64,000 nt of DNA from the sequence record MK568540.2; one strand, 5' to 3'. Position numbers and translations under genes: made by a program. Position 1 is the stretch's first letter; every line of letters starts with the position of its first letter. The notes beneath the pieces are model-generated. The model was not told the origin of the DNA, ran no database searches, and worked only from the letters and a program-made list of their open reading frames with translations. Of the stretch, positions 3,001-32,465 are shown piece by piece.

Positions 3001-3203
3001 AACCTCGTTTCGCTAGTAAACGGGTTAGGGTATAACGCTGTGAAACTTTGTGTTAGAAGAATTTCTGCACTAACAGCCGAACGAACATGAATCTCGTAGC
3101 GAAAGTTTTCGCCCACGGTTGACCATGAAAGTTCCGCATAGTTTCGCGTCAATTTGTCAATAGACACCCCCATAATCGGAGGTGCTTGTAATACGTTTGC
3201 CAT
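1..3203 (-). CDS. 7: Baseplate wedge subunit gp7 (partial; runs off the window start, so absent from the ORF track)
   Basis: ATG at 3203 overlaps the gp6 stop. N-terminus MANVLQAPPIMGVSIDKLTRNYAELSWSTVGENFRY resembles T4 gp7; synteny with gp6. Confidence 0.85.
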   Translation of the reverse strand, partial: MANVLQAPPIMGVSIDKLTRNYAELSWSTVGENFRYEIHVRSAVSAEILLTQSFTALYPNPFTSETRLFTNINSSVRYYQWRIRSVYKGFEPSEWVTSDIGYTSDTNDYDITTQDEFIPASSFIEERLNNDNDQYLNSRNNLQATLVRPGFEFDPNMFNVESAAYWFVTNPGFSANYGKVPTVCQNVDRVIPVVIDDVIYAFERWQQVCKVSNDGGRTWQTYKATNSRLGNPVYDCICKQSNAFSYLLGYDYLIQGVQSNDVDYSHDNGLEYSHASVDLTFDKLDFDLGFGFDVERFKDLAILPPQVRNKADAFGVDDVMSVVTYANTYVWHNNRIPRIFDNVLSELYGERIFETTGELNNEPVYFEDKIVKNDASRPNFDENTADVCVKKIQYFDDPEQGLDYQDGNMFALVIGEWEHDENGKRIGTSDPNEIRGVYRLNRTATLRDGIVIGYTGLTWERVYGNIEEERELLNERSVISRDNTHLIVGHDLTKNYGEEGNPAYDNRQESSGAPGNFHSTAGDNYGTIDDPYLVSDNDEVDEAVRMFTKPFFTTYVKPMTQIIATKDGDDWYYKPQDYYGSAHFNWMQRAETRDWKSWANEIMYYKKESIFRSDFEDLDEYKWKETFDEGEYKLEAPNLSIFGFNGYAAGAIIHSANDNKVIGYYKFPYRVDITAPIRWSPERRVITASLSNYSPVIIEPPEEDPTSMLDPTLTPLIYKMMPENYLDADGFYKSFAKHYLDFISKGDGTAYNNVYNLLNSKNPLDDHYTEYLHKLVYERNRILEPEKRDAVVKFFLARRADFYSTKGILDSYKFLFKLLYNEDVEVEIESLNTFEYSIVVNSNDVTDDVVGRRIYSETGNADVTYVDRHYIEGKRYWKLTLNNLIGELNIGDTLEIDGLEFTATAITRVQGERIDYDSNEFLDRSKSYYVMKIRSEIQLSQYKDDVIRFVHPIGFGFLGITLLTVLINHGISVNHHETIVDSYRLIRYDNGIGNNFTEETSLLDGNDDRIYNSFGELQLKPHPLALEDPLDHAIQDRLTNTQGITIIDYNNYWANDRVIALDEYSAI

Positions 3204-5161
3204 TAAGAAATACCCTCAAGAACGATATCCGTGTATTGAGGACGAAGCTCGTTCTCATATACGATCAAGCTACCGTCATCTGTGTATATATTAGATCGTG
3301 TAGGCGAAGCTGATACAATCAAATTACCAGTCACATCCCAATCTGCTGAGTTTATCCCCAAGTTGATGAAATCATAGTCCATCATACCTGATGCGTAGTT
3401 GATAGTACCAATTCGGTAGTATAAGCTGCGCGAGCCGATTACTTCACGATCAAAGTCGTTATCAGTATAAGCACCCGTAGGCAAGCCAGTTTCTGGGTCT
3501 AGCGGGTTTGTAATATCACCGGGTGCAAATGGACCCAATAACATCGTACCGATATCTTCTTCGGTCGGTGCAGTTCGTGCGGCTGTCGTTCTGATCTGCA
3601 CGTCATACCCGCCCGGTGTGAACATGATATCTTCTGATTTTACAGAACGCTCAGTAATCGGGTTTAAGAAACTATAGCCACTCATAGGCGTTTGAGCGAA
3701 ATTCGCTAATTCACGAATTAAGCTAATGTCACATCTAGAACCTAGAATTGACGGGTGAGCTTCATCAACATAGCTCAACATCTTAGAAACATGGAACGAT
3801 GCATTGAAGATCTCAACATCATTGTAGTAATAATCTGAAATCGCATTGATGATTTGAGCTTTCAAATAATCAGCACCTTCAGCCAATGAACCTGTACGGT
3901 AGTTGATTCTCAGATTATGTTTTACATACAAGTAATCTGGGTCAACGACTTTAGGTGTCACTGTAACGATATTGAATTCTTTCAAATATTCTTCGATGTC
4001 TTGTCGCGCTACTTGTGGTAGTGTCAACCCGCTCTTCGGCTTAATCGAGATAAACACATAACCTGGCTTATCTGAGCTTCCGAACGCCTGAACAGACTGA
4101 ACGATGTTACCGAACTTCTGAGAAACAAATGTTTCATAGTCAAGTTTAGTAACACAACGACGCTGCGACTCTCTGAAAATAGGGGCTAGTTCGCGAATAC
4201 GCTCCGTGCCTTCAGCATAACCACCACCAATCGAACCAACAAAGTTTTCATCGTTATTCGGGTTATCGTCGATGTTTTTATCATCTAACTGGAAGTTAGG
4301 AATGTCATCTGCCCATGTGAATCGTTTTGAGCCGTTAGCAACTGGTCCCTGTGTTTTCACATATTGAACACGAATGCGCTGACCTTCGATTGGACGCAGA
4401 CCGCCGATATAACCCGGGTCGTAAGCACCACCACTTTCTACAAAGTCAGTTAGTTCGCCTTCACCGAAGTAAACCTCAGTGTAACCATCTACAGTTTCAC
4501 GCAGATAGAATACGTTTGAACCGCCTGTTACATTGACTATCGATTTGTCTGTCCAGTTAGTCCATTCCGTGTTATCAACGAACACACGCACATAGTTTCG
4601 ATCTAAATCTGGGTCTTTGATCGTAATCGATTCGGTTTCACTAAATAGCGCCTCATATCGACCTAAAGTGCCTTGAACGAGGTCTATCTGGTCTTGATAT
4701 ACAAGCGGGCTTTGTGGGTCTAATGGGTCCTGCTTTGCACCGATTAGAATGTGAGGTTCCCACACGATGTAGCTGTAGTAATCAACCCCATCAACGTCAG
4801 CACTGAAACGAGTACCCGTACCTAGCGTAATTTCAACTGGGTTTTCAGCGTGATACGCTTTGATACCGATTGTATGTGTTGCTGCCGATAAAGAACTAGG
4901 CGCGTAACCCATATCTTGAGCGTGCTGAACTACACTGCTGTGTTTTTGAGCAGTGCGAATAAAACTCTCGAACAATGCTGCATTCGAGTAGTGCTGCATG
5001 TACATTGTGCTGTATGCAAGCAAATCTGTTAGTACGTTCAGACGACTTCCCTTGAAGTCATAATCCTTGAACTCGTCTTGACCTTTCAGATATTGAATAA
5101 GATCTTGCTTGATTGTCTCAAACGAGCCAGAACTAACAGGCAAATTCGAGTTAGTTGTCAT
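3203..5161 (-). CDS. 6: Baseplate wedge subunit gp6
   Basis: 652 aa; FKDYDFKGSRLNVLTDLLAY and RELAPIFRESQRRCVTKLDY motifs typical of gp6. Confidence 0.95.
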   Translation of the reverse strand: MTTNSNLPVSSGSFETIKQDLIQYLKGQDEFKDYDFKGSRLNVLTDLLAYSTMYMQHYSNAALFESFIRTAQKHSSVVQHAQDMGYAPSSLSAATHTIGIKAYHAENPVEITLGTGTRFSADVDGVDYYSYIVWEPHILIGAKQDPLDPQSPLVYQDQIDLVQGTLGRYEALFSETESITIKDPDLDRNYVRVFVDNTEWTNWTDKSIVNVTGGSNVFYLRETVDGYTEVYFGEGELTDFVESGGAYDPGYIGGLRPIEGQRIRVQYVKTQGPVANGSKRFTWADDIPNFQLDDKNIDDNPNNDENFVGSIGGGYAEGTERIRELAPIFRESQRRCVTKLDYETFVSQKFGNIVQSVQAFGSSDKPGYVFISIKPKSGLTLPQVARQDIEEYLKEFNIVTVTPKVVDPDYLYVKHNLRINYRTGSLAEGADYLKAQIINAISDYYYNDVEIFNASFHVSKMLSYVDEAHPSILGSRCDISLIRELANFAQTPMSGYSFLNPITERSVKSEDIMFTPGGYDVQIRTTAARTAPTEEDIGTMLLGPFAPGDITNPLDPETGLPTGAYTDNDFDREVIGSRSLYYRIGTINYASGMMDYDFINLGINSADWDVTGNLIVSASPTRSNIYTDDGSLIVYENELRPQYTDIVLEGIS

Positions 5162-18353: not shown

Positions 18354-18620
18354 ATGTCACAACAAACTGCTGAACAAGTAATCGAACAGAAAGACGCACA
18401 AATCAAAGATCTTAAAGTGCGTACCTTTGACCTACAAGAGACTCTTCAAGAAGAGCGCAATTCTTTTGGTCAGTTCGTGGGTGTACTAGCTCAACTACTC
18501 GATTTCGATCAGACGCAAGCAAGTTCTCTACAGAACTACGTTGACGAAATCGCAATTCTAACCGGTAAAGCTGAACGTCCTGCTGAAGGCGACGGCGAAC
18601 AAGAAAAAGACGCTGAATAA
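18354..18620 (+). CDS. 57A: Tail fibre chaperone gp57A
   Basis: Coiled coil with LKVRTFD motif; position after gene 1. Confidence 0.8.
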   Translation: MSQQTAEQVIEQKDAQIKDLKVRTFDLQETLQEERNSFGQFVGVLAQLLDFDQTQASSLQNYVDEIAILTGKAERPAEGDGEQEKDAE

Positions 18621-19075
18621 TGAAACTATCTAAGTTCCTTGAAAGTCAGGGAACTTACGTTGGTATCAGATTAGACGAGGCGAGTAAGCAAGAGTTAGTT
18701 CGATTGCAGAAAACGCTTCGTCTAAAAAATCCGTTAGAACCAGATAAATTTCACGTGACTGTGCTTTATAGTCGTAAGCAAATTGATGTACCTGTTGTCG
18801 ATACCACTTTCGTTGCTACTGTTGAACATATCGACTGTTGGAAAACGCAAGACGGCAAATATGCAGTTGTTGCTAAGATGGTATGTCCAGAACTTGTAGA
18901 ACGTCACGATGATCTTATCTCTATCGGTGGTACTCACGACTACCCTGACTATACCCCTCACGTTACGTTGTCTTATGACGACGCGATCACACCTATGCCC
19001 GTCAACGCTGAAGTTCGGCTTGTTGATGAATATCTTGAACCACTTGATTTAAATTGGGTTAATAGTAATGACTGA
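18620..19075 (+). CDS. 57B: gp57B / Acb1, 2H phosphodiesterase (anti-CBASS)
   Basis: Two HxT motifs (HVTV, HVTL); WKTQDG, THDYPDYTPH and EYLEPLDLNW are shared with T4 57B. Confidence 0.9.
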   Translation: MKLSKFLESQGTYVGIRLDEASKQELVRLQKTLRLKNPLEPDKFHVTVLYSRKQIDVPVVDTTFVATVEHIDCWKTQDGKYAVVAKMVCPELVERHDDLISIGGTHDYPDYTPHVTLSYDDAITPMPVNAEVRLVDEYLEPLDLNWVNSND

Positions 19076-19322
19076 TTTATCTACTGAAGCAGTATTAAAG
19101 AAGTACAATGAAGCTCCCGAAACTCTAACTACTGAAGAGAACGTTGTATTATTGACGTATATCATCGGTATGCAGACCGATCAGATTGCTTTACTTAAAG
19201 AGAACAACAAACTTTACGATAAAGCTATCACTGAGCTTCAGCAAGCTGTATCTCAGCTTCAAATCAAGCACGCTGCGCTTGAACGAGGTGAGACAGAAAG
19301 CGGTATCATTCTTTCAGTATAA
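19068..19322 (+). CDS. Hypothetical coiled-coil protein
   Basis: 84 aa ORF coupled to 57B. Confidence 0.7.
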   Translation: MTDLSTEAVLKKYNEAPETLTTEENVVLLTYIIGMQTDQIALLKENNKLYDKAITELQQAVSQLQIKHAALERGETESGIILSV

Positions 19323-19339
19323 AAACTTTCAAAAAGTTG

Positions 19340-19367
19340 TTGACTTATTCTGAAAAGCATGTAGAAT
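19340..19367 (+). promoter_or_regulatory. Early promoter
   Basis: AAAAAGTTG-TTGACT..TAGAAT. Confidence 0.7.
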
Positions 19368-19431
19368 GTATTTCATCGAGTCGAGAGACAGAACACAAAC
19401 TTTCAACTCGATGAAATATTTGAAAAAGTTG

Positions 19432-19459
19432 TTGACTTACACTGAAATGATGTTAAGAT
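19432..19459 (+). promoter_or_regulatory. Early promoter driving the RNA island
   Basis: AAAAAGTTG-TTGACT..TG-T-TAAGAT. Confidence 0.7.
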
Positions 19460-19467
19460 TAACACAG

Positions 19468-19576
19468 TTGATTAAGCGAGCTAAGTTCATCGTTCTCGCC
19501 TCTTATTGAAGATGAACAATATTGATTAAGCAGACTAAACTCATCGTTTCTGCCTCTTCTCTGAAGATGAGTAATA
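19468..19576 (+). repeat. Two tandem 54/55-nt repeats, each an H-type pseudoknot
   Basis: Copy 1: GCGAG/CTCGC plus GTTCATC/GATGAAC. Copy 2: GCAGA/TCTGC plus ACTCATC/GATGAGT. Both stems show compensatory changes. Confidence 0.85.
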
Positions 19577-19721
19577 TTTTAAATGTGCGTTAGCCGCAAT
19601 GAATACATGGAGCCAGTATACGTTCTGGCGTGCAGGGATACTCTTAGCGGACGAATTCTCAATCAAAAACTAGCTGAGTTAAAATTCGCTCAGTCGGCGT
19701 GCAAGTAGCGCACATTTAAAA
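19577..19721 (+). ncRNA. Orphan structured RNA
   Basis: 13-bp terminal stem TTTTAAATGTGCG/CGCACATTTAAAA with inner stems GCCG/CGGC and GCCAG/CTGGC. Confidence 0.55.
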
Positions 19722-19739
19722 TATCGAGAGTACATTGGT

Positions 19740-19862
19740 CGAGTGTTGGTGTAGTGGCAGCACACGTAGCATACTGTAATCAGACATGATTATATTCAGC
19801 AACCAATTTACGCATATCATAGGGAGATCGTGGGAACGGTTCGATTCCGTTACACTCGACCA
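19740..19862 (+). ncRNA. tRNA-like RNA E1 with CAGCAA module inserted in the anticodon stem (loop ATAGGGA)
   Basis: Acceptor CGAGTGT/ACACTCG, D-arm, T-arm AACGG-TTCGATT-CCGTT, ACCA end; 49-nt insert after position 28; 21-bp leader/trailer duplex 19726-19872. Confidence 0.8.
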
Positions 19863-20121
19863 ATGTACTCTCACTAACAAAGCGAGGTGGACAATTTGAT
19901 TGTATATCTTCTCGCACTAGTATTCATCGTCCTTTTTGCCTTGGACATTGAAGAAGAAAAGGTGCGCATTCATACTTTTGCGCTAATCACATGCGAACGG
20001 GTCATTCATCCCGTAATTAAAGCGCACGATTCCAGATTGTGTTTTGATTAGCTAAGGCAAATATAACTAGAGGATTTTTGGTGCTTGTGGTTAATCACAA
20101 GCACTCTCAAGAACATATTGA

Positions 20122-20243
20122 GCAGGGTTGGTGTAGTGGCTAGCACACGTAGCATAAACGCAAGCTGTTAAGTTTGTATTCTGCAATCAATTTAGCATAT
20201 CATTTCCAAGATCGTGACGCAGGTTCGAATCCTGCACCCTGCT
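20122..20243 (+). ncRNA. tRNA-like RNA E2 with CTGCAA module (loop ATTTCCAA)
   Basis: Cloverleaf with insert after position 28; 17-bp extended acceptor duplex 20112-20252; no encoded CCA. Confidence 0.8.
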
Positions 20244-20260
20244 CAATATGTTTTTACATT

Positions 20261-20373
20261 GGTGAAGTTAGTTCAGTAGGTTAGAACGCCGGCCAAAAAA
20301 CGAAGTCTGATAAGATTTCATTCTGCATTCACATGCACGCCGGAGGTCGCAGGTTCGAGTCCTGCACTTCACC
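20261..20373 (+). ncRNA. tRNA-like RNA E3 with CTGCAT module in the anticodon loop
   Basis: GGTGAAGT/ACTTCACC acceptor, CCGGC/GCCGG anticodon stem, canonical T-arm. Confidence 0.8.
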
Positions 20374-20383
20374 TTCAAATTCT

Positions 20384-20508
20384 GGAGAGTTAGCTCAGTC
20401 TGGTAGAGCAAAAGAATGTTAAAGAATACTGACAAGCATTCATGCTGCAAACCTTAATAACTAGGTAAATCTTTTTGTCACGTGGTTCAAATCCCGTACT
20501 CTCCACCA
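20384..20508 (+). ncRNA. tRNA-like RNA E4 with CTGCAA module in the anticodon loop
   Basis: GGAGAGT/ACTCTCC-A-CCA, GCTC/GAGC D-stem, AAAGA/TCTTT anticodon stem. Confidence 0.8.
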
Positions 20509-20522
20509 ATTTTCGAGGGTTT

Positions 20523-20891
20523 ATGAATAAGTTTAATGACATAAATGACGAACTTGATTGTATATTGCATCGTTGTGAGATTGTAAAGCGCAATCTTCGA
20601 AAATATTGTACATTTGCTGTTGAAATGCAGTATAGACTTATGATAAACTTCATTGGCATGGGTTGCTATCAACAAGTTCTGCCGATATTAGACAATCTAA
20701 ATTATCACCCTGATACAAGTCAGTTTGATAATATTGAGATTATGCAAACTATAAAAGAATTGATGAAATGTGCAGATAAGCTCGATTTGCTGCATCAACA
20801 AGACGCATTTCATCAAATTAAATCGACTGCTCGTATTACAGAAGAAGCAAACATCTTCGCTGCGAAAGTTGGTCGATTTCTAGAGAAATGA
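20523..20891 (+). CDS. Hypothetical protein
   Basis: ATG 20523 after SD GAGG (the track's GTG start overlaps E4). Confidence 0.65.
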   Translation: MNKFNDINDELDCILHRCEIVKRNLRKYCTFAVEMQYRLMINFIGMGCYQQVLPILDNLNYHPDTSQFDNIEIMQTIKELMKCADKLDLLHQQDAFHQIKSTARITEEANIFAAKVGRFLEK

Positions 20892-20892
20892 T

Positions 20893-20970
20893 GGCCCTAT
20901 AGCTCAACACGGTTAGAGCAACCGACTCATAATCGGTAGGTTACAGGTTCGAGTCCTGTTGGGGTCACCA
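20893..20970 (+). tRNA. tRNA-Ile2/Met (CAT)
   Basis: Canonical cloverleaf, loop CTCATAA, CCA; GGCCC start like ileX. Confidence 0.92.
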
Positions 20971-20990
20971 AAATAAATTGAAAAAAGTTG

Positions 20991-21019
20991 TTGACAGACG
21001 TTTCATCAACGTGTAGTAT
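20991..21019 (+). promoter_or_regulatory. Early promoter
   Basis: AAAAAAGTTG-TTGACA-N17-TAGTAT. Confidence 0.8.
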
Positions 21020-21049
21020 ACACATTATCAACTACACGAGGAAAACATT

Positions 21050-21280
21050 ATGTCACATAAATTGCTAGTTATCACATCAATGCACGGTTGCTACGTCGAT
21101 TACGATTTCAGAACTGAAATGTTTGACAGATACATGTGTGATGTTGTGATTCCGAACGACTCTGTTGTTTTGTACTCGGGTACAGTTTCAATAGATGAAA
21201 TTCGAGCAGTTGCGAACGAATGTTACGCTGACATCAAGATTGAAGAAGTCAGTGATGATGTTTTTGACAGCTATCTTTAA
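21050..21280 (+). CDS. Hypothetical protein
   Basis: SD GAGGA; 76 aa. Confidence 0.7.
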   Translation: MSHKLLVITSMHGCYVDYDFRTEMFDRYMCDVVIPNDSVVLYSGTVSIDEIRAVANECYADIKIEEVSDDVFDSYL

Positions 21281-21284
21281 AAAT

Positions 21285-21524
21285 GCCGCTAACTGGCGTA
21301 CAATACACAGTGTATTCCCAACATTAGTGCAGACGTAGGCTCGCAACCTACGTTGGTACCGAATCACTGGGACCGAGTAGAAAGTGCATGTGAGATGTCG
21401 AAGTCTTGTATGTAGAAATAACGCTCGGCTGCTCTGAAATGCTGATTAGCTCTTACTTCGAAACTCTAATTGGGTGGAAGAGGTGTTGTGTTTGACGTGT
21501 GTTCGATTCACACGAGCGGCGCCA
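21285..21524 (+). ncRNA. tmRNA-shaped RNA (tRNA-like ends, ~190-nt internal domain)
   Basis: GCCGCT/AGCGGC-G-CCA acceptor; T-arm CGTGTG-TTCGATT-CACACG; long H2-like helix (ACAATAC/GTGTTGT, TTCC/GGAA, ATTAG/CTAAT). Confidence 0.65.
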
Positions 21525-21537
21525 AGAGGAAATTATA

Positions 21538-22059
21538 ATGAAACCATTGAAGTTCGTTGAGGCGTTCTCTAAAGAAGAACGTGCTGCTATGACGATTGAA
21601 GAACGTAGCAGACTTCGTAAAATATATAACGAACGCTATCAAGAGTATGTTGATAAGTACATCAATGTATTCACTCGAAAAGACTTTCGAAGAGAGCGTT
21701 GCTGGGTTATTCTTGCACGATGTAAAAAGACTGGTGAAATCATCGGTCGAATTGAAAATAGTTTTAGTATGGGATGGTCTAAAGAGCGTGTTCGTGTTAT
21801 TCGACCGTATCTAAACGGTAATTTCACGGGCGATGACCGCTTCTCTAAAGCTGAGTACAACAAAGCGTGTGCTGAGTACATAACTCATCATGAGAAACAA
21901 GTAAAGTCTCTCAGAGAAGCTTACAAAGACACTCACGACGTTTTCTTATCTCGTGTGGGTAGTAAGAACTGTCCTGTTTCTATTGATTGGGATACGTATT
22001 ACAGTAAAAAAGACAAACGAAACTTTGAATATCGAAATTTGAAATTCAAAGTTAAATAA
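21538..22059 (+). CDS. Hypothetical basic protein
   Basis: ATG 21538 after SD GAGGA. Confidence 0.7.
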   Translation: MKPLKFVEAFSKEERAAMTIEERSRLRKIYNERYQEYVDKYINVFTRKDFRRERCWVILARCKKTGEIIGRIENSFSMGWSKERVRVIRPYLNGNFTGDDRFSKAEYNKACAEYITHHEKQVKSLREAYKDTHDVFLSRVGSKNCPVSIDWDTYYSKKDKRNFEYRNLKFKVK

Positions 22060-22064
22060 TTCAT

Positions 22065-22180
22065 AGTCGGGTAGCTCAGTGGTAGAGCACGAAGAATGAT
22101 ACTGACAAGTATCGCTCCAGCACTCCTTCAATTGCCTGTTAAGCACGTGGTCGCTGGTTCGAATCCAGCCCCGACTACCA
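22065..22180 (+). ncRNA. tRNA-Asn(GTT)-like RNA E5 with a 41-nt CAGCAC module inserted between positions 28 and 29
   Basis: Removing the insert restores CGTGC-CTGTTAA-GCACG; acceptor AGTCGGG/CCCGACT-A-CCA. Confidence 0.85.
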
Positions 22181-22206
22181 TTTTTGATAAACTAGTGAGG
22201 TATAAC

Positions 22207-22443
22207 ATGAGCGGAACATTTAATATCAACAAAACGTTACTGACTCCGAAACAATTGCGCAATCTAACAGATGAGCGTCTGAATGAATATCGCAAGTCGT
22301 TTCGTAAGCCTCTTGGGTTTTTGAAGCATCTGAACGATACAAACGAATTGACTTCAGATCAGCACAAGAAATTCGTTGAGCTTAATAAGCACTACAACGA
22401 CGAAATTCTTGCTGAAATGAACAAGCGAAAACACTTAGGTTAA
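22207..22443 (+). CDS. Hypothetical protein
   Basis: ATG 22207 after SD GAGG; reads on the plus strand. Confidence 0.6.
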   Translation: MSGTFNINKTLLTPKQLRNLTDERLNEYRKSFRKPLGFLKHLNDTNELTSDQHKKFVELNKHYNDEILAEMNKRKHLG

Positions 22444-22556
22444 TAAAATCGCAGAAAATTGATAATTTTTTTCAATTTTCTGCGAAAATACCGCAAATCG
22501 TCAGATTTAGTGTTATAAGTACTATAAAGAAACAAAACAAATTTTAATTTTTATTT

Positions 22557-22681
22557 CAAGAGAGCATTCAATGACGCATTCGTTTACACATTCATCTGAG
22601 ACATTACGCAGCGATTTTCTGCGCTCAGAATTCGTGTATCTAGCGAATCCGATTGCGAACCAGAAGTGGGATACCCTCTTG
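22557..22681 (+). ncRNA. Orphan structured RNA
   Basis: Nested stems CAAGAG/CTCTTG, TACAC/GTGTA, CTGAG/CTCAG, CGCAG/CTGCG; followed by a terminator. Confidence 0.5.
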
Positions 22682-22713
22682 TAGTCCGATAGTATAACAT
22701 AGAAGTATACTTG

Positions 22714-22738
22714 AGGACGCAAATAGCGTCCTTTTTTT
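22714..22738 (+). terminator. Rho-independent terminator
   Basis: AGGACGC-AAATA-GCGTCCT followed by a T-run. Confidence 0.85.
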
Positions 22739-22815
22739 ATGGGCGTAAGAAAGTTAAGAAATTTTGTTTAACGTACTTTGATTACAGAGTATGATAAACA
22801 AAGTTAAAGAACAAA

Positions 22816-22889
22816 CGGGACGTGGCGTAAAGGTAGCGTTCATGCTTTGGGAGCATGTGGTAAGAGTTCGAGTCTCTTCGTCCCGACCA
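22816..22889 (+). tRNA. tRNA-Pro (TGG)
   Basis: Cloverleaf, loop TTTGGGA, CCA. Confidence 0.92.
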
Positions 22890-22898
22890 ATTTAAAAT

Positions 22899-22975
22899 CC
22901 GTGACTAGCTCAATCTGGTAGAGTACTCCGTTTGGGGCGGAGAAGTTAAGCGTTCGAATCGCTTGTCACGGACCA
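22899..22975 (+). tRNA. tRNA-Pro (TGG)
   Basis: Cloverleaf, loop TTTGGGG, CCA. Confidence 0.9.
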
Positions 22976-22982
22976 GTTTAAT

Positions 22983-23058
22983 GCCCGATTAGCTCAATTG
23001 GAAGAGCAGCGCCCTACGAAGGCGAAGGTTACAAGTTCGAATCTTGTATTGGGTGCCA
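22983..23058 (+). tRNA. tRNA-Arg (ACG)
   Basis: Cloverleaf, loop CTACGAA, CCA. Confidence 0.92.
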
Positions 23059-24051: not shown

Positions 24052-24139
24052 AGCTTGCATACTGCAATTTAACTTAATCTATTGATCGCTCGGCGAACTC
24101 AGTTCAGACAGCGATAAACAGACCAAAGAACGCAAGCTG
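24052..24139 (+). ncRNA. Free-standing CTGCAA-motif RNA
   Basis: GCTTGC-ATA-CTGCAA ... GCAAGC-TG with inner ATCGCT/AGCGAT stem. Confidence 0.75.
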
Positions 24140-24148
24140 TTGAATAAT

Positions 24149-24842: not shown

Positions 24843-24901
24843 AGTAATCTTACAGCAAACAATACAAAACTTTTATTTGGAAAAAGCAAAAAGGATTACT
24901 G
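24843..24901 (+). ncRNA. Minimal CAGCAA-motif RNA carrying an anticodon-like stem-loop
   Basis: GTAATC-TTA-CAGCAA ... CTTTT-ATTTGGA-AAAAG ... GATTAC-TG. Confidence 0.8.
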
Positions 24902-24912
24902 TTTAAATTCAA

Positions 24913-25310: not shown

Positions 25311-25424
25311 GAGTGTTTTCAGCAAACAATTTACTAATATTCTTATCGGAAAGAAATGTTTAGGGTTCGATTCCCTTTCAGTGTTGGTATCACTGGTCTG
25401 GACGACGCTAGTAATAACACTCAG
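25311..25424 (+). ncRNA. Circularly permuted tRNA-like RNA closed by the CAGCAA motif (YrlA-like topology)
   Basis: Order: GAGTGT-TTT-CAGCAA, anticodon-like hairpin, T-arm AGGG-TTCGATT-CCCT, closed acceptor CAGTG/CACTG, D-like hairpin, ACACTC-AG. Confidence 0.8.
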
Positions 25425-25428
25425 TAAC

Positions 25429-25504
25429 GCCCTGATAGCACAACTGGCAGTGCAGCTCACTTGTAATGAGCAGGTTCGCGGTTCGAATCCGTGTCAGGGC
25501 ACCA
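25429..25504 (+). tRNA. tRNA-Thr (TGT)
   Basis: Loop CTTGTAA, CCA. Confidence 0.92.
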
Positions 25505-25745: not shown

Positions 25746-25820
25746 GGGCCGTTAGCTTAATTGGGAAAGCGCCTCACTTGCAATGAGGAAGATAGGGTTC
25801 GACTCCCTGCGTGTCCACCA
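25746..25820 (+). tRNA. tRNA-Ala (TGC)
   Basis: Loop CTTGCAA; irregular acceptor/T stems; CCA. Confidence 0.8.
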
Positions 25821-26033: not shown

Positions 26034-26262
26034 AGACAATATACAGCAAACAATTGAAATTACTTAAAAGAAGTGATGATCTTAACCTGGGCTGATTTTA
26101 ACCTGAGCTTGCTTAGGCGCAGCTTGAAAGGAAAGATTCTCTCTGTCTAGAAATAGTCAGATAGGCGCGTCGCTGAAACAGACGATATTTGCTTGTTGAG
26201 AATCAATAAGCTAGTCAACTCCGATTTATGCAAAAGACGAAAAAACACTTCGGTATTGTCTG
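26034..26262 (+). ncRNA. Large CAGCAA-motif RNA L1
   Basis: GACAAT-ATA-CAGCAA ... ATTGTC-TG; several hairpins; 3' block shared with L2. Confidence 0.8.
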
Positions 26263-26266
26263 TACT

Positions 26267-26485
26267 TAATTCGTCGGAAACGACACTGTAGCCGAAAGGC
26301 AAGATACGCTAACTTAGATGTTAGCAGCGATATAGGATGTATCGCGTGGCATTATTATGAACGTTTCTAGTCATCGTCATGTAAAACAATCAAAACTAAG
26401 CAGAGGTAACAGTACCCACTATGTGGTTCCTCACTCAGACCATGAATATATGGTGTCAGCCAGTGTGCGATTAAATGAGTTAATT
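26267..26485 (+). ncRNA. Orphan multi-hairpin RNA with GNRA loops
   Basis: GTCG-GAAA-CGAC, GCC-GAAA-GGC, GCTAAC/GTTAGC, GCGATA/TATCGC, ACCAT/ATGGT. Confidence 0.55.
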
Positions 26486-27999: not shown

Positions 28000-28260
28000 G
28001 CAATAAGACATTGTACAGCAATCATTACAAAATCAAAGCAAACTTTAATAGTAATGAGGCGCACTAGCTGCTTTCTCAGTGATGACGTGAGCCTGTCGCA
28101 TTCTCATGGTAGGAAATGACCATTAAGACGGTGTTCGTACTGTCAAACGAAATAGGACTCATGCCGAATCATGAGTATTTTTCCGATGAGAAACATCGTT
28201 ATAGTCAATTGAGATTTAAGGAAAGACGATAAAACATTTCTCGAATGTCTGTGTATTGCA
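28000..28260 (+). ncRNA. Large CAGCAA-motif RNA L2
   Basis: GACATT-GTA-CAGCAA ... AATGTC-TG, outer GCAATA/TATTGC stem, many hairpins, 3' block shared with L1. Confidence 0.8.
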
Positions 28261-30951: not shown

Positions 30952-30980
30952 GTTTACATGCATTAAAATTCGCGTATAAT
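30952..30980 (+). promoter_or_regulatory. T4-type early promoter of the DUF2828 gene
   Basis: AAAAAAGT-GTTTAC-N17-TATAAT. Confidence 0.8.
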
Positions 30981-30992
30981 CACTTCATCAAA

Positions 30993-31035
30993 GACATTTT
31001 ACAGCAATTAATTATGAGGAAATGAACAATGTCAG
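30993..31035 (+). promoter_or_regulatory. CAGCAA motif enclosing the SD and pairing with the start codon of the DUF2828 gene
   Basis: GACATT-TTA-CAGCAA-...GAGG...-AATGTC-AG; the ATG at 31029 lies in the 3' strand. Confidence 0.85.
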
Positions 31036-32465
31036 TATTTATGAACGCAATGCAAACAAACGATTCACGCACAGCAAACGGTGCAGTTACTCACAGCACT
31101 TCAGGTAACGAGTGTCTAAACTTGTTCTTCGGTATTGCTGCTATGCGTGGCAACGATCAGTCTAAAACACTGTTCGGTCGTGCGTTTGCAGAAAACCCAG
31201 AACTAGCGACTCGCATTCTTTTGTGGTCTCGTGATGTTCGAGGTGGTGCGGGTGAACGTGGTACTTTCCGTACTCTATTCACTAAACTTTGTAATGAACA
31301 GCCTGACGTAGCTCGTGCTGTAATGTCGAAAATTCCAGAACTAGGTCGTTACGATGACTTGATTTCTGCTTTCGGTACACGTCTTGAAAAAGATGCGATT
31401 ACAATGTGGTCGAACGCAATTGTCAATGACAAGAATGGTCTTGCTGCGAAGTGGTTCCCACGTGAAAACAGCAAAAACGGTCATGTGTTCAAGCGCACAA
31501 TCAAGTCTCTTGGCGTAACTGCGAAGCAGTGGCGTAAGATTCTGTCGCTTCTGTCTGACACTGTTGAGCAGAAGATGTGTGCGCAAAAATGGGATGCAAT
31601 CGACTTCGGTAAGTTGCCTTCTGTAGCGTCTGCTCGTTATCAACAAGCATTCGGTCGTAACGCTTCAACACGTTACACAAACTACATCGAGTCACTTCAA
31701 AAAGGTGAAGCGAAGATCAACGCTGGCGCATTGTTCCCATACGATGTCGTTAAGAGCGTTAGTCACGGTAATGCGTCTGTAGCGAACGAGCAATGGAAAG
31801 CTCTGCCAAACTACATGGAAGGTTCTGATGAACGCATCATCCCTGTTGTTGACGTGTCTGGCTCTATGAGCACGCCAATTAACGCAGGTACAGACCGTTC
31901 AGGTGTGACTTGTAAGCAAGTTGCAATGTCTCTTGGGATTTATGTTGCTGAACGCAATGAAGGCATCTTCAAAGATCAGTTCATTTCGTTCTCAAGCGAC
32001 CCGCACTTCCACCAGTTGCGCGGCTCTTCATTGAAAGAGCGTCTTGATAACATGAATCGTTCAGGCGAAGACATGAGTACGAACATCGGTAAGTGCTTTG
32101 ATGTTCTGCTAGAGCGTGCGAAGCGTGCAAATCTTTCACAAGAAGATATGCCAACCAAGTTGCTTATCATGAGTGACATGGAATTCGATCAAGCAAACAC
32201 TGGTGGTGGTTGGTACGGTCGCGGTGAACCTGCGAACTTCGATGCAATCAAAGCCAAGTACGCACGTGCTGGTTATGAAATGCCACAACTGGTCTTCTGG
32301 AACATTCGTGGTCGTCTTGGCAACGTTCCGGTTAAAGCTGGTGAAGCGGGTACTGCACTGGTATCTGGTTGTAGCCCATCTATCTTGACTTCACTGTTGG
32401 GTGGTGAGCTTGAGCCAATCAAGATCATGATGAAAACTGTAGGCGTCGAACGCTACAGCTTTTAA
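31029..32465 (+). CDS. DUF2828-type TROVE/Ro60-like protein with C-terminal vWA domain
   Basis: T.NGA..HSTSG..CL.LF, RDVRGGAGER, IPELGRYDDL, AKWFPR; vWA MIDAS DVSGSM, ST, LIMSDMEFD, VFWN. Confidence 0.8.
   Translation: MSVFMNAMQTNDSRTANGAVTHSTSGNECLNLFFGIAAMRGNDQSKTLFGRAFAENPELATRILLWSRDVRGGAGERGTFRTLFTKLCNEQPDVARAVMSKIPELGRYDDLISAFGTRLEKDAITMWSNAIVNDKNGLAAKWFPRENSKNGHVFKRTIKSLGVTAKQWRKILSLLSDTVEQKMCAQKWDAIDFGKLPSVASARYQQAFGRNASTRYTNYIESLQKGEAKINAGALFPYDVVKSVSHGNASVANEQWKALPNYMEGSDERIIPVVDVSGSMSTPINAGTDRSGVTCKQVAMSLGIYVAERNEGIFKDQFISFSSDPHFHQLRGSSLKERLDNMNRSGEDMSTNIGKCFDVLLERAKRANLSQEDMPTKLLIMSDMEFDQANTGGGWYGRGEPANFDAIKAKYARAGYEMPQLVFWNIRGRLGNVPVKAGEAGTALVSGCSPSILTSLLGGELEPIKIMMKTVGVERYSF

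What the first reader, a model, noticed from the sequence alone, without database searches (positions are those of the whole stretch)
20261..20508. tRNA chimeras E3 and E4: anticodon loop replaced by the motif module
Seen: intact acceptor, D and T arms and full 5-bp anticodon stems (CCGGC/GCCGG; AAAGA/TCTTT). The loops are expanded to ~45-55 nt and contain the 6-bp helix capped by TGATAA or TGACAA plus CTGCA. Across E1-E5 the capping loop is always 6 nt (AGACAT, TGTTAA, TGATAA, TGACAA, TGACAA). Inference: a tRNA elbow is fused to a protein-binding handle, and the same module was acquired at different positions on different tRNA bodies.
Basis: partly seen in the sequence, partly recalled or inferred. 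Interest (0 to 1): 0.78.

Follow-up and report, generated by a model that had tools for sequence, protein, structure and literature searches.

The report
tRNA-shaped Y-RNA-like phage RNAs
Two conserved tRNA-shaped RNAs of a KVP40-like Vibrio phage carry, in place of the anticodon loop, a small hairpin-plus-UNCNGCA module that in hundreds of other phages lies right beside the gene for a Ro60-like protein, so they are most likely non-decoding partner RNAs of that protein (a new topology of Y RNA), not broken or intron-containing tRNAs.

Summary
E3 (20262-20373) and E4 (20384-20505, plus an encoded CCA) score as tRNA in Rfam, with 45- and 54-nt anticodon loops. Each loop holds a 6-bp helix capped by UGAUAA or UGACAA and followed by U-N-C-N-G-C-A. 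Three paralogues (E1, E2, E5) carry the same module.

In 35 homologues from Vibrio, Aeromonas and Synechococcus phages the cloverleaf and the module helix covary, and the single-stranded motif is invariant.

The window's DUF2828/DUF7788 protein (31029-32465) has the Ro60 fold in an AlphaFold model. The same helix plus motif, in an "open" form, lies next to DUF2828 genes in Felix O1-like, Listeria, mycobacterial, Aeromonas and cyanophage genomes. It also follows the stop codon in 53 of 79 metagenomic loci. In this window it occurs six more times in and beside the tRNA cluster, and once in the gene's own 5' UTR.

E1-E5 are the circular permutation of YrlA-type Y RNAs: the acceptor stem is open and the protein-binding stem is capped.

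Best reading: they are Ro60-like-protein partner RNAs. Binding and function are inferred, not shown. Verdict: a new variant of a known kind.

The parts
20262..20373 (+). E3: tRNA-shaped RNA. It has acceptor, D and T arms, a 5-bp anticodon stem and a 45-nt loop holding the capped handle. No CCA is encoded.
   Evidence: Rfam tRNA 56.3 bits. MFE fold z = -2.96. Consensus fold of 7 orthologues: 14 of 33 pairs have compensatory changes. Coordinates.
20302..20327 (+). E3 handle: helix 20302-20307/20314-20319, cap UGAUAA 20308-20313, then A plus UUCUGCA 20321-20327.
   Evidence: The helix covaries and the motif is invariant in 35 sequences.
20384..20508 (+). E4: tRNA-shaped RNA with a 5-bp anticodon stem and a 54-nt loop holding the handle plus a second hairpin (20451-20466). 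Discriminator A and CCA are encoded (20505-20508).
   Evidence: Rfam tRNA 50.1 bits. Consensus fold of 8 orthologues. A-CCA is encoded in all 6 E4-type sequences checked.
20424..20449 (+). E4 handle: helix 20424-20429/20436-20441 (one A.C mismatch), cap UGACAA 20430-20435, then A plus UGCUGCA 20443-20449.
19740..19858 (+). E1: paralogous tRNA-shaped RNA with a capped handle (cap AGACAU). The anticodon stem is reduced to 2-3 bp. The acceptor stem is extended by 5 flanking bp.
   Evidence: Model R1 83 bits..
20122..20242 (+). E2: paralogue of E1 (cap UGUUAA).
   Evidence: Model R1 116 bits..
22065..22180 (+). E5: paralogue (cap UGACAA) with a conserved extra hairpin GCCUGUUAAGC. A-CCA is encoded.
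   Evidence: Rfam tRNA 49.8 bits. The hairpin is shared with Synechococcus phage BUCT-ZZ01 and Aeromonas phage Aeh1.
19583..19715 (+). Open handle M-a: closing stem, then UU plus AGCCGCAAU. This is a variant motif with A in place of the first U.
   Evidence: The MFE fold has a closing stem of about 15 bp.
24053..24144 (+). Open handle M-b: GCUUGC, A, UACUGCAAU, then GCAAGC followed by UGUUGAA. It lies in the gap between tRNA-Tyr and tRNA-Met.
   Evidence: An identical element is present in KVP40 (L001 7759).
24844..24906 (+). Open handle M-c: GUAAUC, U, UACAGCAAAC, then GAUUAC followed by UGUUUAA.
   Evidence: The KVP40 orthologue has a compensatory change, GCAAUC/GAUUGC.
25311..25429 (+). Open handle M-d. 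It encloses a T-arm-like hairpin and a following stem-loop, an order that resembles YrlA.
26035..26267 (+). Open handle M-e, with a large 213-nt insert.
28007..28256 (+). Open handle M-f, lying after the last tRNA.
30993..31033 (+). Open handle M-g in the 5' UTR of the Ro60-like gene: GACAUU, U, UACAGCAAU, loop containing the Shine-Dalgarno sequence, then AAUGUC. The 3' strand overlaps the start codon at 31029-31031. Candidate autoregulatory operator.
   Evidence: The same arrangement is present in Vibrio phage 1.081.O.
31029..32465 (+). Ro60-like protein gene. The N-terminal part is a helical repeat (DUF2828). The C-terminal part is a vWA domain (DUF7788) with an intact MIDAS motif, D275-x-S277-x-S279.
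   Evidence: Pfam. PHROG 850 'RNA-binding protein'. AlphaFold2 model, pLDDT 79. Foldseek best hits are Ro60 structures 9l5y, 2i91 and 1yvr, full length. Invariant residues.
19340..19459 (+). Two T4-early-type promoter-like sites (TTGACT, 16 nt, TAGAAT or TAAGAT) upstream of M-a and E1-E4. No terminator-like site lies before 21957.
   Evidence: Consensus matches only.

Best explanation
E3 and E4 are stable, non-decoding, tRNA-shaped RNAs. They are two of five paralogues (E1-E5) in this phage.

The body keeps everything that makes a tRNA elbow: U8, A14, G18-G19, a possible G15-C48 pair and the UUCRANY T loop. It should therefore be cut out of the early polycistronic transcript by the tRNA-processing enzymes. 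E4 even encodes A-CCA.

The anticodon loop is replaced by a 'handle'. This is a 6-bp helix capped by UGNNAA, followed by one nucleotide and the single-stranded motif U-N-C-N-G-C-A(-A).

The handle is the recognition site of the phage's Ro60-like ring protein (DUF2828/DUF7788, window 31029-32465). Each RNA would then be a Y-RNA-like adaptor. One end binds the Ro60-like protein. The other end looks like a tRNA to tRNA-binding enzymes or nucleases.

Topologically these RNAs are the circular permutation of YrlA-type bacterial Y RNAs. In YrlA the protein-binding stem carries the 5' and 3' ends and the acceptor stem is capped. Here the acceptor stem carries the ends and the protein-binding stem is capped.

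The ribonucleoprotein most likely works in RNA surveillance or counter-defence early in infection. A copy of the handle over the protein's own start codon probably lets the protein repress its own translation.

Shown: the structures, their conservation and covariation, the motif, the genomic linkage of handle and gene, and the Ro60 fold.
Inferred: binding, processing, autoregulation and biological role.
For: 1. tRNA shape. Rfam tRNA hits of 56.3 and 50.1 bits. The cloverleaf and handle helix covary in 35 homologues from four phage groups. Within E3 and E4 orthologues covariation holds too.

2. The motif U-N-C-N-G-C-A is invariant in all 35 sequences, whereas the helix sequence changes freely.

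3. The protein is Ro60-like. The AlphaFold2 model matches Ro60 of Thermus phage phiLo (E 1.9e-8) and Xenopus Ro60 over the full length (TM 0.53-0.56); all other hits cover only the vWA part.

4. Linkage of handle and gene.
- Long tRNA-shaped RNAs with the handle flank the DUF2828 gene in Aeromonas phage APT65 and Synechococcus phage BUCT-ZZ01. They lie about 0.5 kb downstream of it in locus L056 and 2.6 kb downstream in locus L073, a 233,234-bp contig taken to be Aeromonas phage Aeh1 from its length.
- U.C.GCAA occurs 14-76 nt after the stop codon in 53 of 79 IMG/VR DUF2828 loci, against 0.05 expected per locus.
- Open handles sit beside the gene in APT65 (5 in tandem), BUCT-ZZ01 (3), Listeria phage A511 (2), the Felix O1-like phage VpaE1 (4) and mycobacteriophage Snenia (3).
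- One handle lies in this window's own 5' UTR.

5. Permutation. In open handles the 3' strand is followed by UGUUNAA, which is the same sequence as the cap of the closed handles. Compare M-b (GCAAGC-UGUUGAA) with E2 (GCAAGC-UGUUAA). Some open handles enclose a T arm, an acceptor stem-loop and a D arm in that order, which is the YrlA order.

6. Precedent. Ro60 binds tRNA-like YrlA RNAs (PMC4201824). A phage Ro60 binds phage Yrl RNAs and host PNPase (PMC12135203). In the Felix O1-like phage Bas63, a Ro60-like gene directly upstream of the tRNA cluster counters the Ppl defence system; its authors guessed that some 'tRNAs' there are Y RNAs (bioRxiv 10.1101/2024.10.10.617714).
Against: - No binding, expression or processing data exist for these RNAs. 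The whole argument is comparative.
- In this phage the five RNAs lie 9-11 kb from the protein gene, not beside it.
- The protein does not hit Pfam TROVE, and a sequence profile does not find Ro60. The relation is by predicted fold only, from a model of moderate confidence (pLDDT 79).
- The motif differs from the GNCGAA motif of known Ro60-binding Y RNAs (PMC4201824).
- A capped helix cannot thread a free end into a Ro60-type ring, so the binding mode may differ from that of open handles.
- In 26 of the 79 loci the motif was not within 150 nt of the stop codon. In some of these it lies about 400 nt further on.
- Loci within one phage lineage are not independent counts.
Confidence: 0.62

Rival explanations
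1. The handles act in cis on the long pre-tRNA transcript. They recruit the Ro60-like protein, a known binder of misfolded RNA precursors, to chaperone or quality-control maturation of the phage tRNA cluster. On this view E1-E5 are handle-bearing spacers that happen to be tRNA-shaped, not free adaptor RNAs.
For: - Open handles sit in the gaps between tRNA genes in this window (24053, 24844, 25311, 26035, 28007) and in VpaE1.
- DUF2828 genes abut tRNA clusters in Felix O1-like phages (252 records), in Listeria phage A511 and in many IMG/VR loci.
- No terminator-like site separates the elements.
Against: - Many DUF2828 loci have handles but no tRNA within 5 kb, for example L018-L040.
- E1-E5 keep complete, covarying acceptor, D and T arms, and E4 keeps its CCA. 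That is costly if they were only spacers.
- Mycobacteriophage Snenia has a handle RNA of YrlA type beside a single tRNA.
Confidence: 0.15
2. E1-E5 are tRNA decoys or sponges that work without the DUF2828 protein. The intact elbow plus an anticodon-loop-like cap (U-G-N-N-A-A) titrates host tRNA-targeting defence nucleases or tRNA-modifying enzymes. The handle would be recognised by some other phage or host factor.
For: - The caps resemble the U33-G34-N35-N36-A37-A38 part of an anticodon loop.
- Phage tRNAs are known to counter tRNA-cleaving defences (PMC11555353, listed).
- In this phage the RNAs are not adjacent to the DUF2828 gene.
Against: - In open handles the same UGUUNAA sequence is a 3' tail, not a loop, so anticodon-loop mimicry is not the conserved feature.
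- The handle's tight, strand-specific linkage to DUF2828 genes in unrelated phages is unexplained by this model.
Confidence: 0.12
3. E3 and E4 are functional tRNA genes interrupted by short introns that are excised to give decoding tRNAs. The phi-Grn1 record annotates them this way, as tRNA-Phe and tRNA-Asn.
For: - tRNA-finding software calls the orthologues intron-containing tRNAs.
- The E4 loop starts with AUGUUAA, which would read as a GUU anticodon loop.
Against: - The inserts are 45 and 54 nt, and Rfam finds no group I intron or any other family there.
- The E3 loop starts with CA, so there is no U33.
- The AUGUUAA of E4 is lost in the D482 and L056 orthologues while the handle is kept.
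- The 'intron' is the most conserved part, and it also occurs outside any tRNA.
- The phage already has two tRNA-Asn(GUU) genes.
Confidence: 0.03
4. They are decaying tRNA pseudogenes, as annotated in KVP40 (tRNA-Pseudo-3, -4 and -5).
For: The KVP40, Aeh1 and phi-pp2 annotations and papers list them as pseudo-tRNAs (PMC1524935; PMC3468402).
Against: - Every stem is kept by compensatory changes across Vibrio, Aeromonas and Synechococcus phages.
- The inserted motif is invariant.
Confidence: 0.02

Closest known systems
YrlA-type bacterial and phage Y RNAs bound by Ro60/Rsr (Rfam RF02553; Chen et al. 2014, PMC4201824)
   Same: - A non-coding RNA of about 110-130 nt built from a tRNA-like domain (D arm, T arm, acceptor-like stem) and a stem with an adjacent conserved single-stranded motif that serves a Ro60-type ring protein.
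- Encoded with the protein gene.
- Several copies per genome.
   Different: - Circularly permuted topology: here the 5' and 3' ends are in the acceptor stem and the protein stem is capped. In YrlA the ends are in the protein stem and the acceptor stem is capped.
- Different motif: U-N-C-N-G-C-A-A, not G-N-C-G-A-A-N(0-1)-G.
- The protein belongs to DUF2828/DUF7788, not Pfam TROVE.
- The only Rfam YrlA match in the region (32 bits, threshold 69) runs from the T arm of E3 to the D arm of E4, so it is an artefact of two adjacent tRNA-like RNAs.
- There are up to 12 handle-bearing elements in one phage.
Thermus phage phiLo Ro60 with Yrl1/Yrl2 and host PNPase (PMC12135203; PDB 9l5y)
   Same: - A phage-encoded Ro60-fold protein. 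It is the best structural match to the window's protein.
- It has phage-encoded partner RNAs next to its gene.
- It has a proposed counter-defence role.
   Different: - Only 16% sequence identity.
- Its Yrl RNAs are stem-bulge-stem RNAs with a CGAA motif and are not tRNA-shaped.
Bas63 (Felix O1-like coliphage) gp130, a Ro60-like counter of the Ppl defence system (bioRxiv 10.1101/2024.10.10.617714)
   Same: - A Ro60-like gene directly upstream of the phage tRNA cluster. This matches the DUF2828 gene of the Felix O1-like phage VpaE1, which is 46% identical to the window's protein.
- The authors speculated that some annotated tRNAs are its Y RNAs.
   Different: - No RNA partner was identified in that work.
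- In VpaE1 the handle RNAs lie in the gaps between tRNAs and are not tRNA-shaped in the unpermuted sense.
- Orthology of gp130 to the window's protein is inferred. The Bas63 record itself was not checked.
Phage T4 stable RNAs C and D (species 1 and 2), encoded in the tRNA cluster
   Same: - Same syntenic region: gp3, gp1, 57A, 57B, then the tRNA cluster.
- Similar sizes, 139 and 119 nt.
- rnaC ends in a T arm plus an acceptor-like 3' end.
- Function unknown for 50 years.
   Different: - Neither RNA has a U-N-C-N-G-C-A-A handle (read).
- Model R1 gives only 17 bits on rnaC and nothing on rnaD.
Pseudo-tRNA or intron-tRNA annotations in KVP40, phi-pp2, phi-Grn1 and Aeh1
   Same: These are the same loci. 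KVP40 tRNA-Pseudo-5 corresponds to E3, Pseudo-4 to E4 and Pseudo-3 to E5.
   Different: Those annotations treat the loci as defective or interrupted tRNAs. Conservation and linkage to the Ro60-like gene were not noted in the papers read (PMC1524935, PMC3468402, bioRxiv 10.1101/2024.12.24.630238).

Membership tests
tRNA (Rfam RF00005) | Cloverleaf with acceptor, D, anticodon and T arms, scoring above the family threshold | tested here: met
   E3 scores 56.3 bits and E4 50.1 bits against a threshold of 29, both across the full model. The arms covary.
tRNA (functional decoder) | 7-nt anticodon loop with U33 and an anticodon | tested here: not met
   The loops are 45 and 54 nt. The E3 loop begins with CA. 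ARAGORN calls neither RNA.
Intron-containing bacterial or phage tRNA | A self-splicing group I intron in the anticodon loop | tested here: not met
   The inserts are 45 and 54 nt. Rfam gives no intron-family match at E <= 1 in 19000-23000.
Intron-containing bacterial or phage tRNA | Excision of the insert in vivo | not testable with these tools
   This needs RT-PCR or RNA-seq from infected cells.
YrlA / Y RNA (Rfam RF02553) | Score above the family threshold | tested here: not met
   The best match is 32 bits against a threshold of 69. It spans 20345-20409, from the T arm of E3 to the D arm of E4, covering model positions 27-81 only.
YrlA / Y RNA | tRNA-like domain with D and T arms and tertiary-contact nucleotides | tested here: met
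   Alignment positions corresponding to U8, A14, A21 and the GUUC.A.UC T-loop nucleotides are invariant.
YrlA / Y RNA | The 5' and 3' ends pair to form the Ro60-binding stem | tested here: not met
   In E1-E5 the ends form the acceptor stem, and the putative binding stem is a capped hairpin. The open handles in the same window do meet this feature.
YrlA / Y RNA | G-N-C-G-A-A-N(0-1)-G motif at the protein-binding site (PMC4201824) | tested here: not met
   The invariant motif here is U-N-C-N-G-C-A(-A).
YrlA / Y RNA | Encoded near the Ro60 gene (Chen et al. used 4 kb, same strand) | tested here: inconclusive
   E3 and E4 lie 10.5 kb upstream of the gene on the same strand. An open handle lies in the gene's 5' UTR. 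Homologous RNAs are within 0.1-2.6 kb of the gene in APT65, BUCT-ZZ01, L056 and Aeh1.
YrlA / Y RNA | Bound by the Ro60 protein | not testable with these tools
   This needs immunoprecipitation or EMSA.
Ro60 / TROVE protein (for window 31029-32465) | Pfam TROVE domain detectable by sequence | tested here: not met
   Pfam gives only DUF2828 and DUF7788. Neither the single sequence nor a profile finds Ro60 among PDB sequences.
Ro60 / TROVE protein | Helical-repeat ring followed by a vWA domain with a MIDAS motif | tested here: met
   Foldseek gives full-length matches to Ro60 structures 9l5y, 2i91, 9nep and 1yvr (E 2e-8 to 5e-6, TM 0.50-0.56). D275, S277 and S279 are invariant. Whether the model closes into a ring was not inspected.
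T4 rnaC / rnaD stable RNAs | Sequence or structure similarity to the T4 RNAs | tested here: not met
   Model R1 gives 17 bits on rnaC and nothing on rnaD. Neither contains the motif.

The most novel reading that the evidence does not exclude
The DUF2828/DUF7788 proteins are a large, unrecognised Ro60-like branch. They occur in 710 sequenced phage records and in more than 7,000 protein clusters.

Their partner RNAs are defined by a short portable handle: a helix, then U-N-C-N-G-C-A-A, plus a UGUUNAA tail or cap.

Evolution has grafted this handle onto tRNA bodies in both circular permutations, onto bare stem-loops, and onto the protein's own mRNA. The result is a multi-RNA ribonucleoprotein system (about 12 RNAs in this phage) that serves as a general phage counter-defence or RNA-surveillance platform.

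E3 and E4 would be the first Y-type RNAs with native tRNA topology. They could therefore be processed, CCA-tailed and perhaps even charged like real tRNAs.
Probability: 0.4. Interest if true: 0.85.

Novelty: new variant of a known kind. Interest (0 to 1): 0.74.

Why it matters
- It would explain the 'pseudo-tRNAs' that have been annotated in KVP40-type and Aeromonas T4-like phages since 2003.
- It would name the RNA partners of a protein family found in hundreds of phages, including the Felix O1-like phages. In one of those, a Ro60-like gene was reported to counter the Ppl defence system.
- It gives a concrete, mutable 8-nt motif plus helix with which to test Ro60-like protein-RNA recognition.
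- It shows that tRNA mimicry by Y-type RNAs exists in both circular permutations. That bears on how Y RNAs arose from tRNAs and on what the tRNA-like domain is for, which has been open since 2014.
- Practically, tRNA-finding software miscounts these RNAs as tRNAs with introns or as pseudogenes.

Tried and rejected
- Rfam, at both gathering and E-value thresholds. Only tRNA matched, plus a sub-threshold YrlA hit that bridges two adjacent elements. No family covers the handle or the RNAs downstream of DUF2828 genes.
- Sequence searches of the protein against the PDB found only designed armadillo repeats. NCBIfam found nothing.
- Origin of the bodies. E1-E5, with inserts masked, are no closer to any of the 28 phage tRNAs (about 70% identity, generic) than to each other. 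A recent origin from a resident tRNA is rejected.
- E4 as tRNA-Asn with an intron: rejected, because the anticodon-like start of the loop is not conserved.
- An alternative E4 pairing, GAAUG with CAUUC, competes with the anticodon stem. It was set aside because the D482 orthologue restores the 6-bp module helix.
- T4 rnaC and rnaD as homologues: rejected.
- The YrlA motif GNCGAA within the E3 loop (AACGAAG): it is not conserved in V09 or nt-1, so it was rejected.
- My first strict scan (T arm, 7-bp acceptor stem and capped handle) found elements in only 18 of 94 loci. Model R1 also retrieves ordinary tRNAs. Most marine loci turned out to carry the open handle instead.
- A permissive search for open handles has a high background: 193 on the gene strand, 64 on the opposite strand, 41 in shuffled sequence. 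That statistic is used only as support.
- The supplementary tables of Chen et al. 2014 and two reviews were not available. I therefore could not check whether any DUF2828-type phage was in their set.
- The Bas63 record was not located; one accession guess was wrong.
Full report
**Identity of the window.** The region 19400-22400 is 100% identical to Vibrio phage Va3, and 87% identical to KVP40. It matches 52 Vibrio phage records of the KVP40 group. It lies between the T4-like genes gp3, gp1 and 57B and a cluster of 28 tRNA genes. This is the same syntenic position as the tRNA cluster of T4.

**Checking the observation.** Rfam's tRNA model matches 20262-20373 (56.3 bits) and 20384-20505 (50.1 bits) end to end. 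In both, a large insertion sits in the anticodon loop. A third such match is at 22065-22177. ARAGORN reports none of them.

- E3 has a CCGGC/GCCGG anticodon stem around a 45-nt loop.
- E4 has an AAAGA/UCUUU stem around a 54-nt loop.
- Each loop holds a 6-bp helix capped by UGAUAA or UGACAA, then one A, then UUCUGCA or UGCUGCA.
- In this phage the E4 helix has one A.C mismatch.

E1 (19740-19858), E2 (20122-20242) and E5 (22065-22176) carry the same module, with caps AGACAU, UGUUAA and UGACAA. The tertiary-contact nucleotides of a tRNA elbow are intact.

KVP40's record calls the orthologues tRNA-Pseudo-5, -4 and -3. phi-Grn1's record calls them intron-containing tRNAs.

**Conservation.** I collected homologues from 11 KVP40-group phages, Aeromonas phages APT65 and Aeh1, Synechococcus phage BUCT-ZZ01 and a metagenomic contig. 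In the 35-sequence alignment:
- The cloverleaf plus module helix forms standard pairs in 92.9% of cells. Shuffles give 62% and slid partners 37-46%.
- 25 of 27 pairs show double changes, including all six pairs of the module helix.
- The single-stranded U-N-C-N-G-C-A after the helix is invariant.

Orthologue-only alignments of E3 (7 sequences) and E4 (8 sequences) give the same structures.

Many relatives have either E3 or E4 at this slot, while Va3, KVP40 and V09 have both. With inserts masked, the bodies are no closer to any resident tRNA than generic tRNA similarity. All five RNAs carry the module in the anticodon arm. The idea of insertion at different positions is not supported.

**The protein.** Pfam finds DUF2828 plus DUF7788, and PHROG 850 is named 'RNA-binding protein'. 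Sequence searches do not reach any solved structure of known function.

An AlphaFold2 model was built from 22 homologues, with pLDDT 79 and pTM 0.78. Its five best PDB matches are full-length Ro60 structures: Thermus phage phiLo Ro60, then Xenopus Ro60 (E 2e-8 to 5e-6, TM 0.50-0.56). All later hits cover only the vWA domain. The MIDAS residues are invariant.

The family is very large. More than 7,000 clusters were scored. It occurs in 710 phage records, among them Felix O1-like phages, Listeria phage A511-like phages, Campylobacter, Staphylococcus and Enterococcus phages, and mycobacteriophages, where it is annotated 'Ro-like RNA binding protein'.

**Linkage of handle and gene.**
- A BLAST hit to E3 led to Aeromonas phage APT65, and a hit to E2 led to Synechococcus phage BUCT-ZZ01. 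In both, tRNA-shaped RNAs of 112-114 nt with the module flank a DUF2828 gene.
- Among 80 IMG/VR loci fetched with the protein, a covariance model of the alignment found further tRNA-shaped members 0.5 kb (L056) and 2.6 kb (L073) downstream of the gene. L073 is a 233,234-bp contig taken to be Aeh1.
- Most marine loci had none. Reading the DNA after their stop codons showed the bare motif instead. U.C.GCAA occurs 14-76 nt after the stop in 53 of 79 loci, against a background of 0.05 per 150 nt. In several of the remaining loci it lies about 400 nt further on.
- Rfam has no family for these downstream RNAs.

**The open form.** In these loci the motif follows the 5' strand of a 6-7-bp stem by one nucleotide. 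The 3' strand of that stem lies 30-230 nt downstream and is followed by UGUUNAA or a variant. Such open handles occur in several places:
- five times in tandem upstream of the APT65 gene;
- three times upstream of the BUCT-ZZ01 gene;
- twice upstream of Listeria A511 gp57;
- four times between the first tRNAs after the gene in the Felix O1-like phage VpaE1;
- three times after the gene in mycobacteriophage Snenia, where the motif is NACAGCAA.

Their stems differ in sequence but always pair.

In VpaE1 and Snenia one open handle encloses a T arm, an acceptor stem-loop and a D arm in that order. This is the YrlA architecture. Rfam gives a sub-threshold YrlA match of 39 bits in Snenia.

**The permutation.** The cap of the closed handles is the tail of the open handles. 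Compare E2 (GCAAGC-UGUUAA-GUUUGU-A-UUCUGCAAUC) with the open element at 24053-24144 (GCUUGC-A-UACUGCAAU ... GCAAGC-UGUUGAA). E1-E5 are therefore the circular permutation of YrlA-type RNAs. The acceptor stem carries the ends, and the protein stem is closed by what is otherwise its 3' tail.

**Open handles in this window.** They lie at 19583-19715 (variant motif), 24053-24144, 24844-24906, 25311-25429, 26035-26267 and 28007-28256. All are on the + strand, within or flanking the tRNA cluster: M-a lies upstream of E1, M-f follows the last tRNA, and the others sit in gaps between tRNA genes.

- Outside the region 19-31 kb, only about three comparably strict matches occur on either strand.
- The KVP40 orthologue of the 24844 element has a compensatory stem change.

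A seventh copy sits at 30993-31033, in the 5' UTR of the Ro60-like gene. Its loop holds the Shine-Dalgarno sequence, and its 3' strand overlaps the start codon. The same layout is present in Vibrio phage 1.081.O. In APT65 and BUCT-ZZ01 a handle ends just before the Shine-Dalgarno sequence. This looks like a translational operator, which is what one expects if the handle is the protein's binding site.

**Expression context.** Two T4-early-type promoter-like sites at 19340 and 19432 precede the array. No terminator-like site occurs before 21957. E4-type RNAs always encode A-CCA, as do E5 and E1 in this phage. E3-type RNAs mostly do not.

**Literature.**
- The genome papers treat these loci as pseudo-tRNAs (PMC1524935, PMC3468402). 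A 2024 study of Schizotequatroviruses does not mention them.
- Chen et al. 2014 described YrlA RNAs, with a GNCGAA motif, near TROVE-annotated Ro60 genes, including in some phages.
- The phiLo study showed a phage Ro60 binding phage Yrl RNAs and host PNPase.
- Iyer et al. 2021 noted TROVE proteins with a tRNA-like partner in some jumbo phages.
- The PhageMaP preprint found that Bas63 gp130, Ro60-like and directly upstream of the tRNA genes, counters the Ppl defence. Its authors guessed that some annotated tRNAs are Y RNAs.
- A search for 'DUF2828' found nothing relevant.

I found no description of the handle motif, of unpermuted tRNA-shaped partners, or of the link to the KVP40 pseudo-tRNAs. 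Subscription-only literature and the Chen et al. supplementary tables could not be checked.

**Verdict.** The RNAs work like Y RNAs, but they fail several defining features of the YrlA family: score, topology and motif. The protein fails the sequence definition of TROVE while meeting the fold definition.

I therefore file this as a new variant of the Ro60/Y RNA kind. Binding, processing, autoregulation and biological role remain inferences.

Noticed in passing
window 30993-31033: A handle copy lies in the 5' UTR of the Ro60-like gene. Its 3' strand covers the ATG at 31029 and the Shine-Dalgarno sequence is in its loop. A TATAAT box at 30975-30980 would place the mRNA start just upstream. This is a likely autoregulatory operator.
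   Followed up: partly
window 19455-19558: Two 50-nt direct repeats (76% identical) lie just after the early promoter. Each can form a 7-bp stem around a loop that starts GUUCUCGCC or GUUUCUGCC. That resembles the handle motif but does not match it. Function unknown.
   Followed up: no
window 19735-19863 and 20117-20247: In E1 and E2 the flanks add 5 further base pairs to the acceptor stem (UUGGU/ACCAA and AUUGA/UCAAU). These covary in orthologues and give a 12-bp terminal stem. The 'CCA' of E1 is part of this stem.
   Followed up: partly
window 18620-19075: The gene 57B homologue just upstream of the RNA array matches Pfam Acb1, the anti-CBASS phosphodiesterase (E 9e-46). A known counter-defence gene thus sits next to the array.
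   Followed up: no
window 25746-25817: Rfam finds a tRNA here (44.9 bits) that ARAGORN does not report.
   Followed up: no
L045 8357-8466 and 8748-8867; L050 8357-8478 and 8798-8944; L053 10202-10294: A different class of over-long tRNA-like RNAs (93-147 nt) occurs in tRNA clusters downstream of DUF2828 genes on cyanophage-like contigs. Their 5' half is AGUCCUGUGGCGGAAUUGGUAGACGC. They have large inserts but no U-N-C-N-G-C-A-A handle.
   Followed up: no
L096 2507-3058 (Listeria phage A511): A sub-threshold ROOL RNA match (87.5 bits, threshold 99.1) lies between a tRNA and the two open handles upstream of the DUF2828 gene gp57.
   Followed up: no
L100 3054-3172, minus strand (T4 rnaD): T4 species 2 RNA contains the hairpin GGUUCC-CUGAGUAA-GGAAUU and, further on, CACAGCAG. 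Both are faintly reminiscent of the handle but do not match it. T4 rnaC ends in a T arm.
   Followed up: partly
L004-L011 at about 3150-3280: E3 and E4 alternate at one genomic slot. nt-1, QD01 and D479 have only an E3-type RNA there. CZ01, VS2, D482, F86 and PVA8 have only an E4-type RNA. Va3, KVP40 and V09 have both in tandem.
   Followed up: partly
L013 2302-3282 (BUCT-ZZ01); L094 1759-2691 (Snenia): Neighbouring genes recur near the Ro60-like gene. BUCT-ZZ01 has a second vWA protein just after the tRNA-shaped RNAs. Snenia has a band-7/SPFH protein upstream.
   Followed up: no
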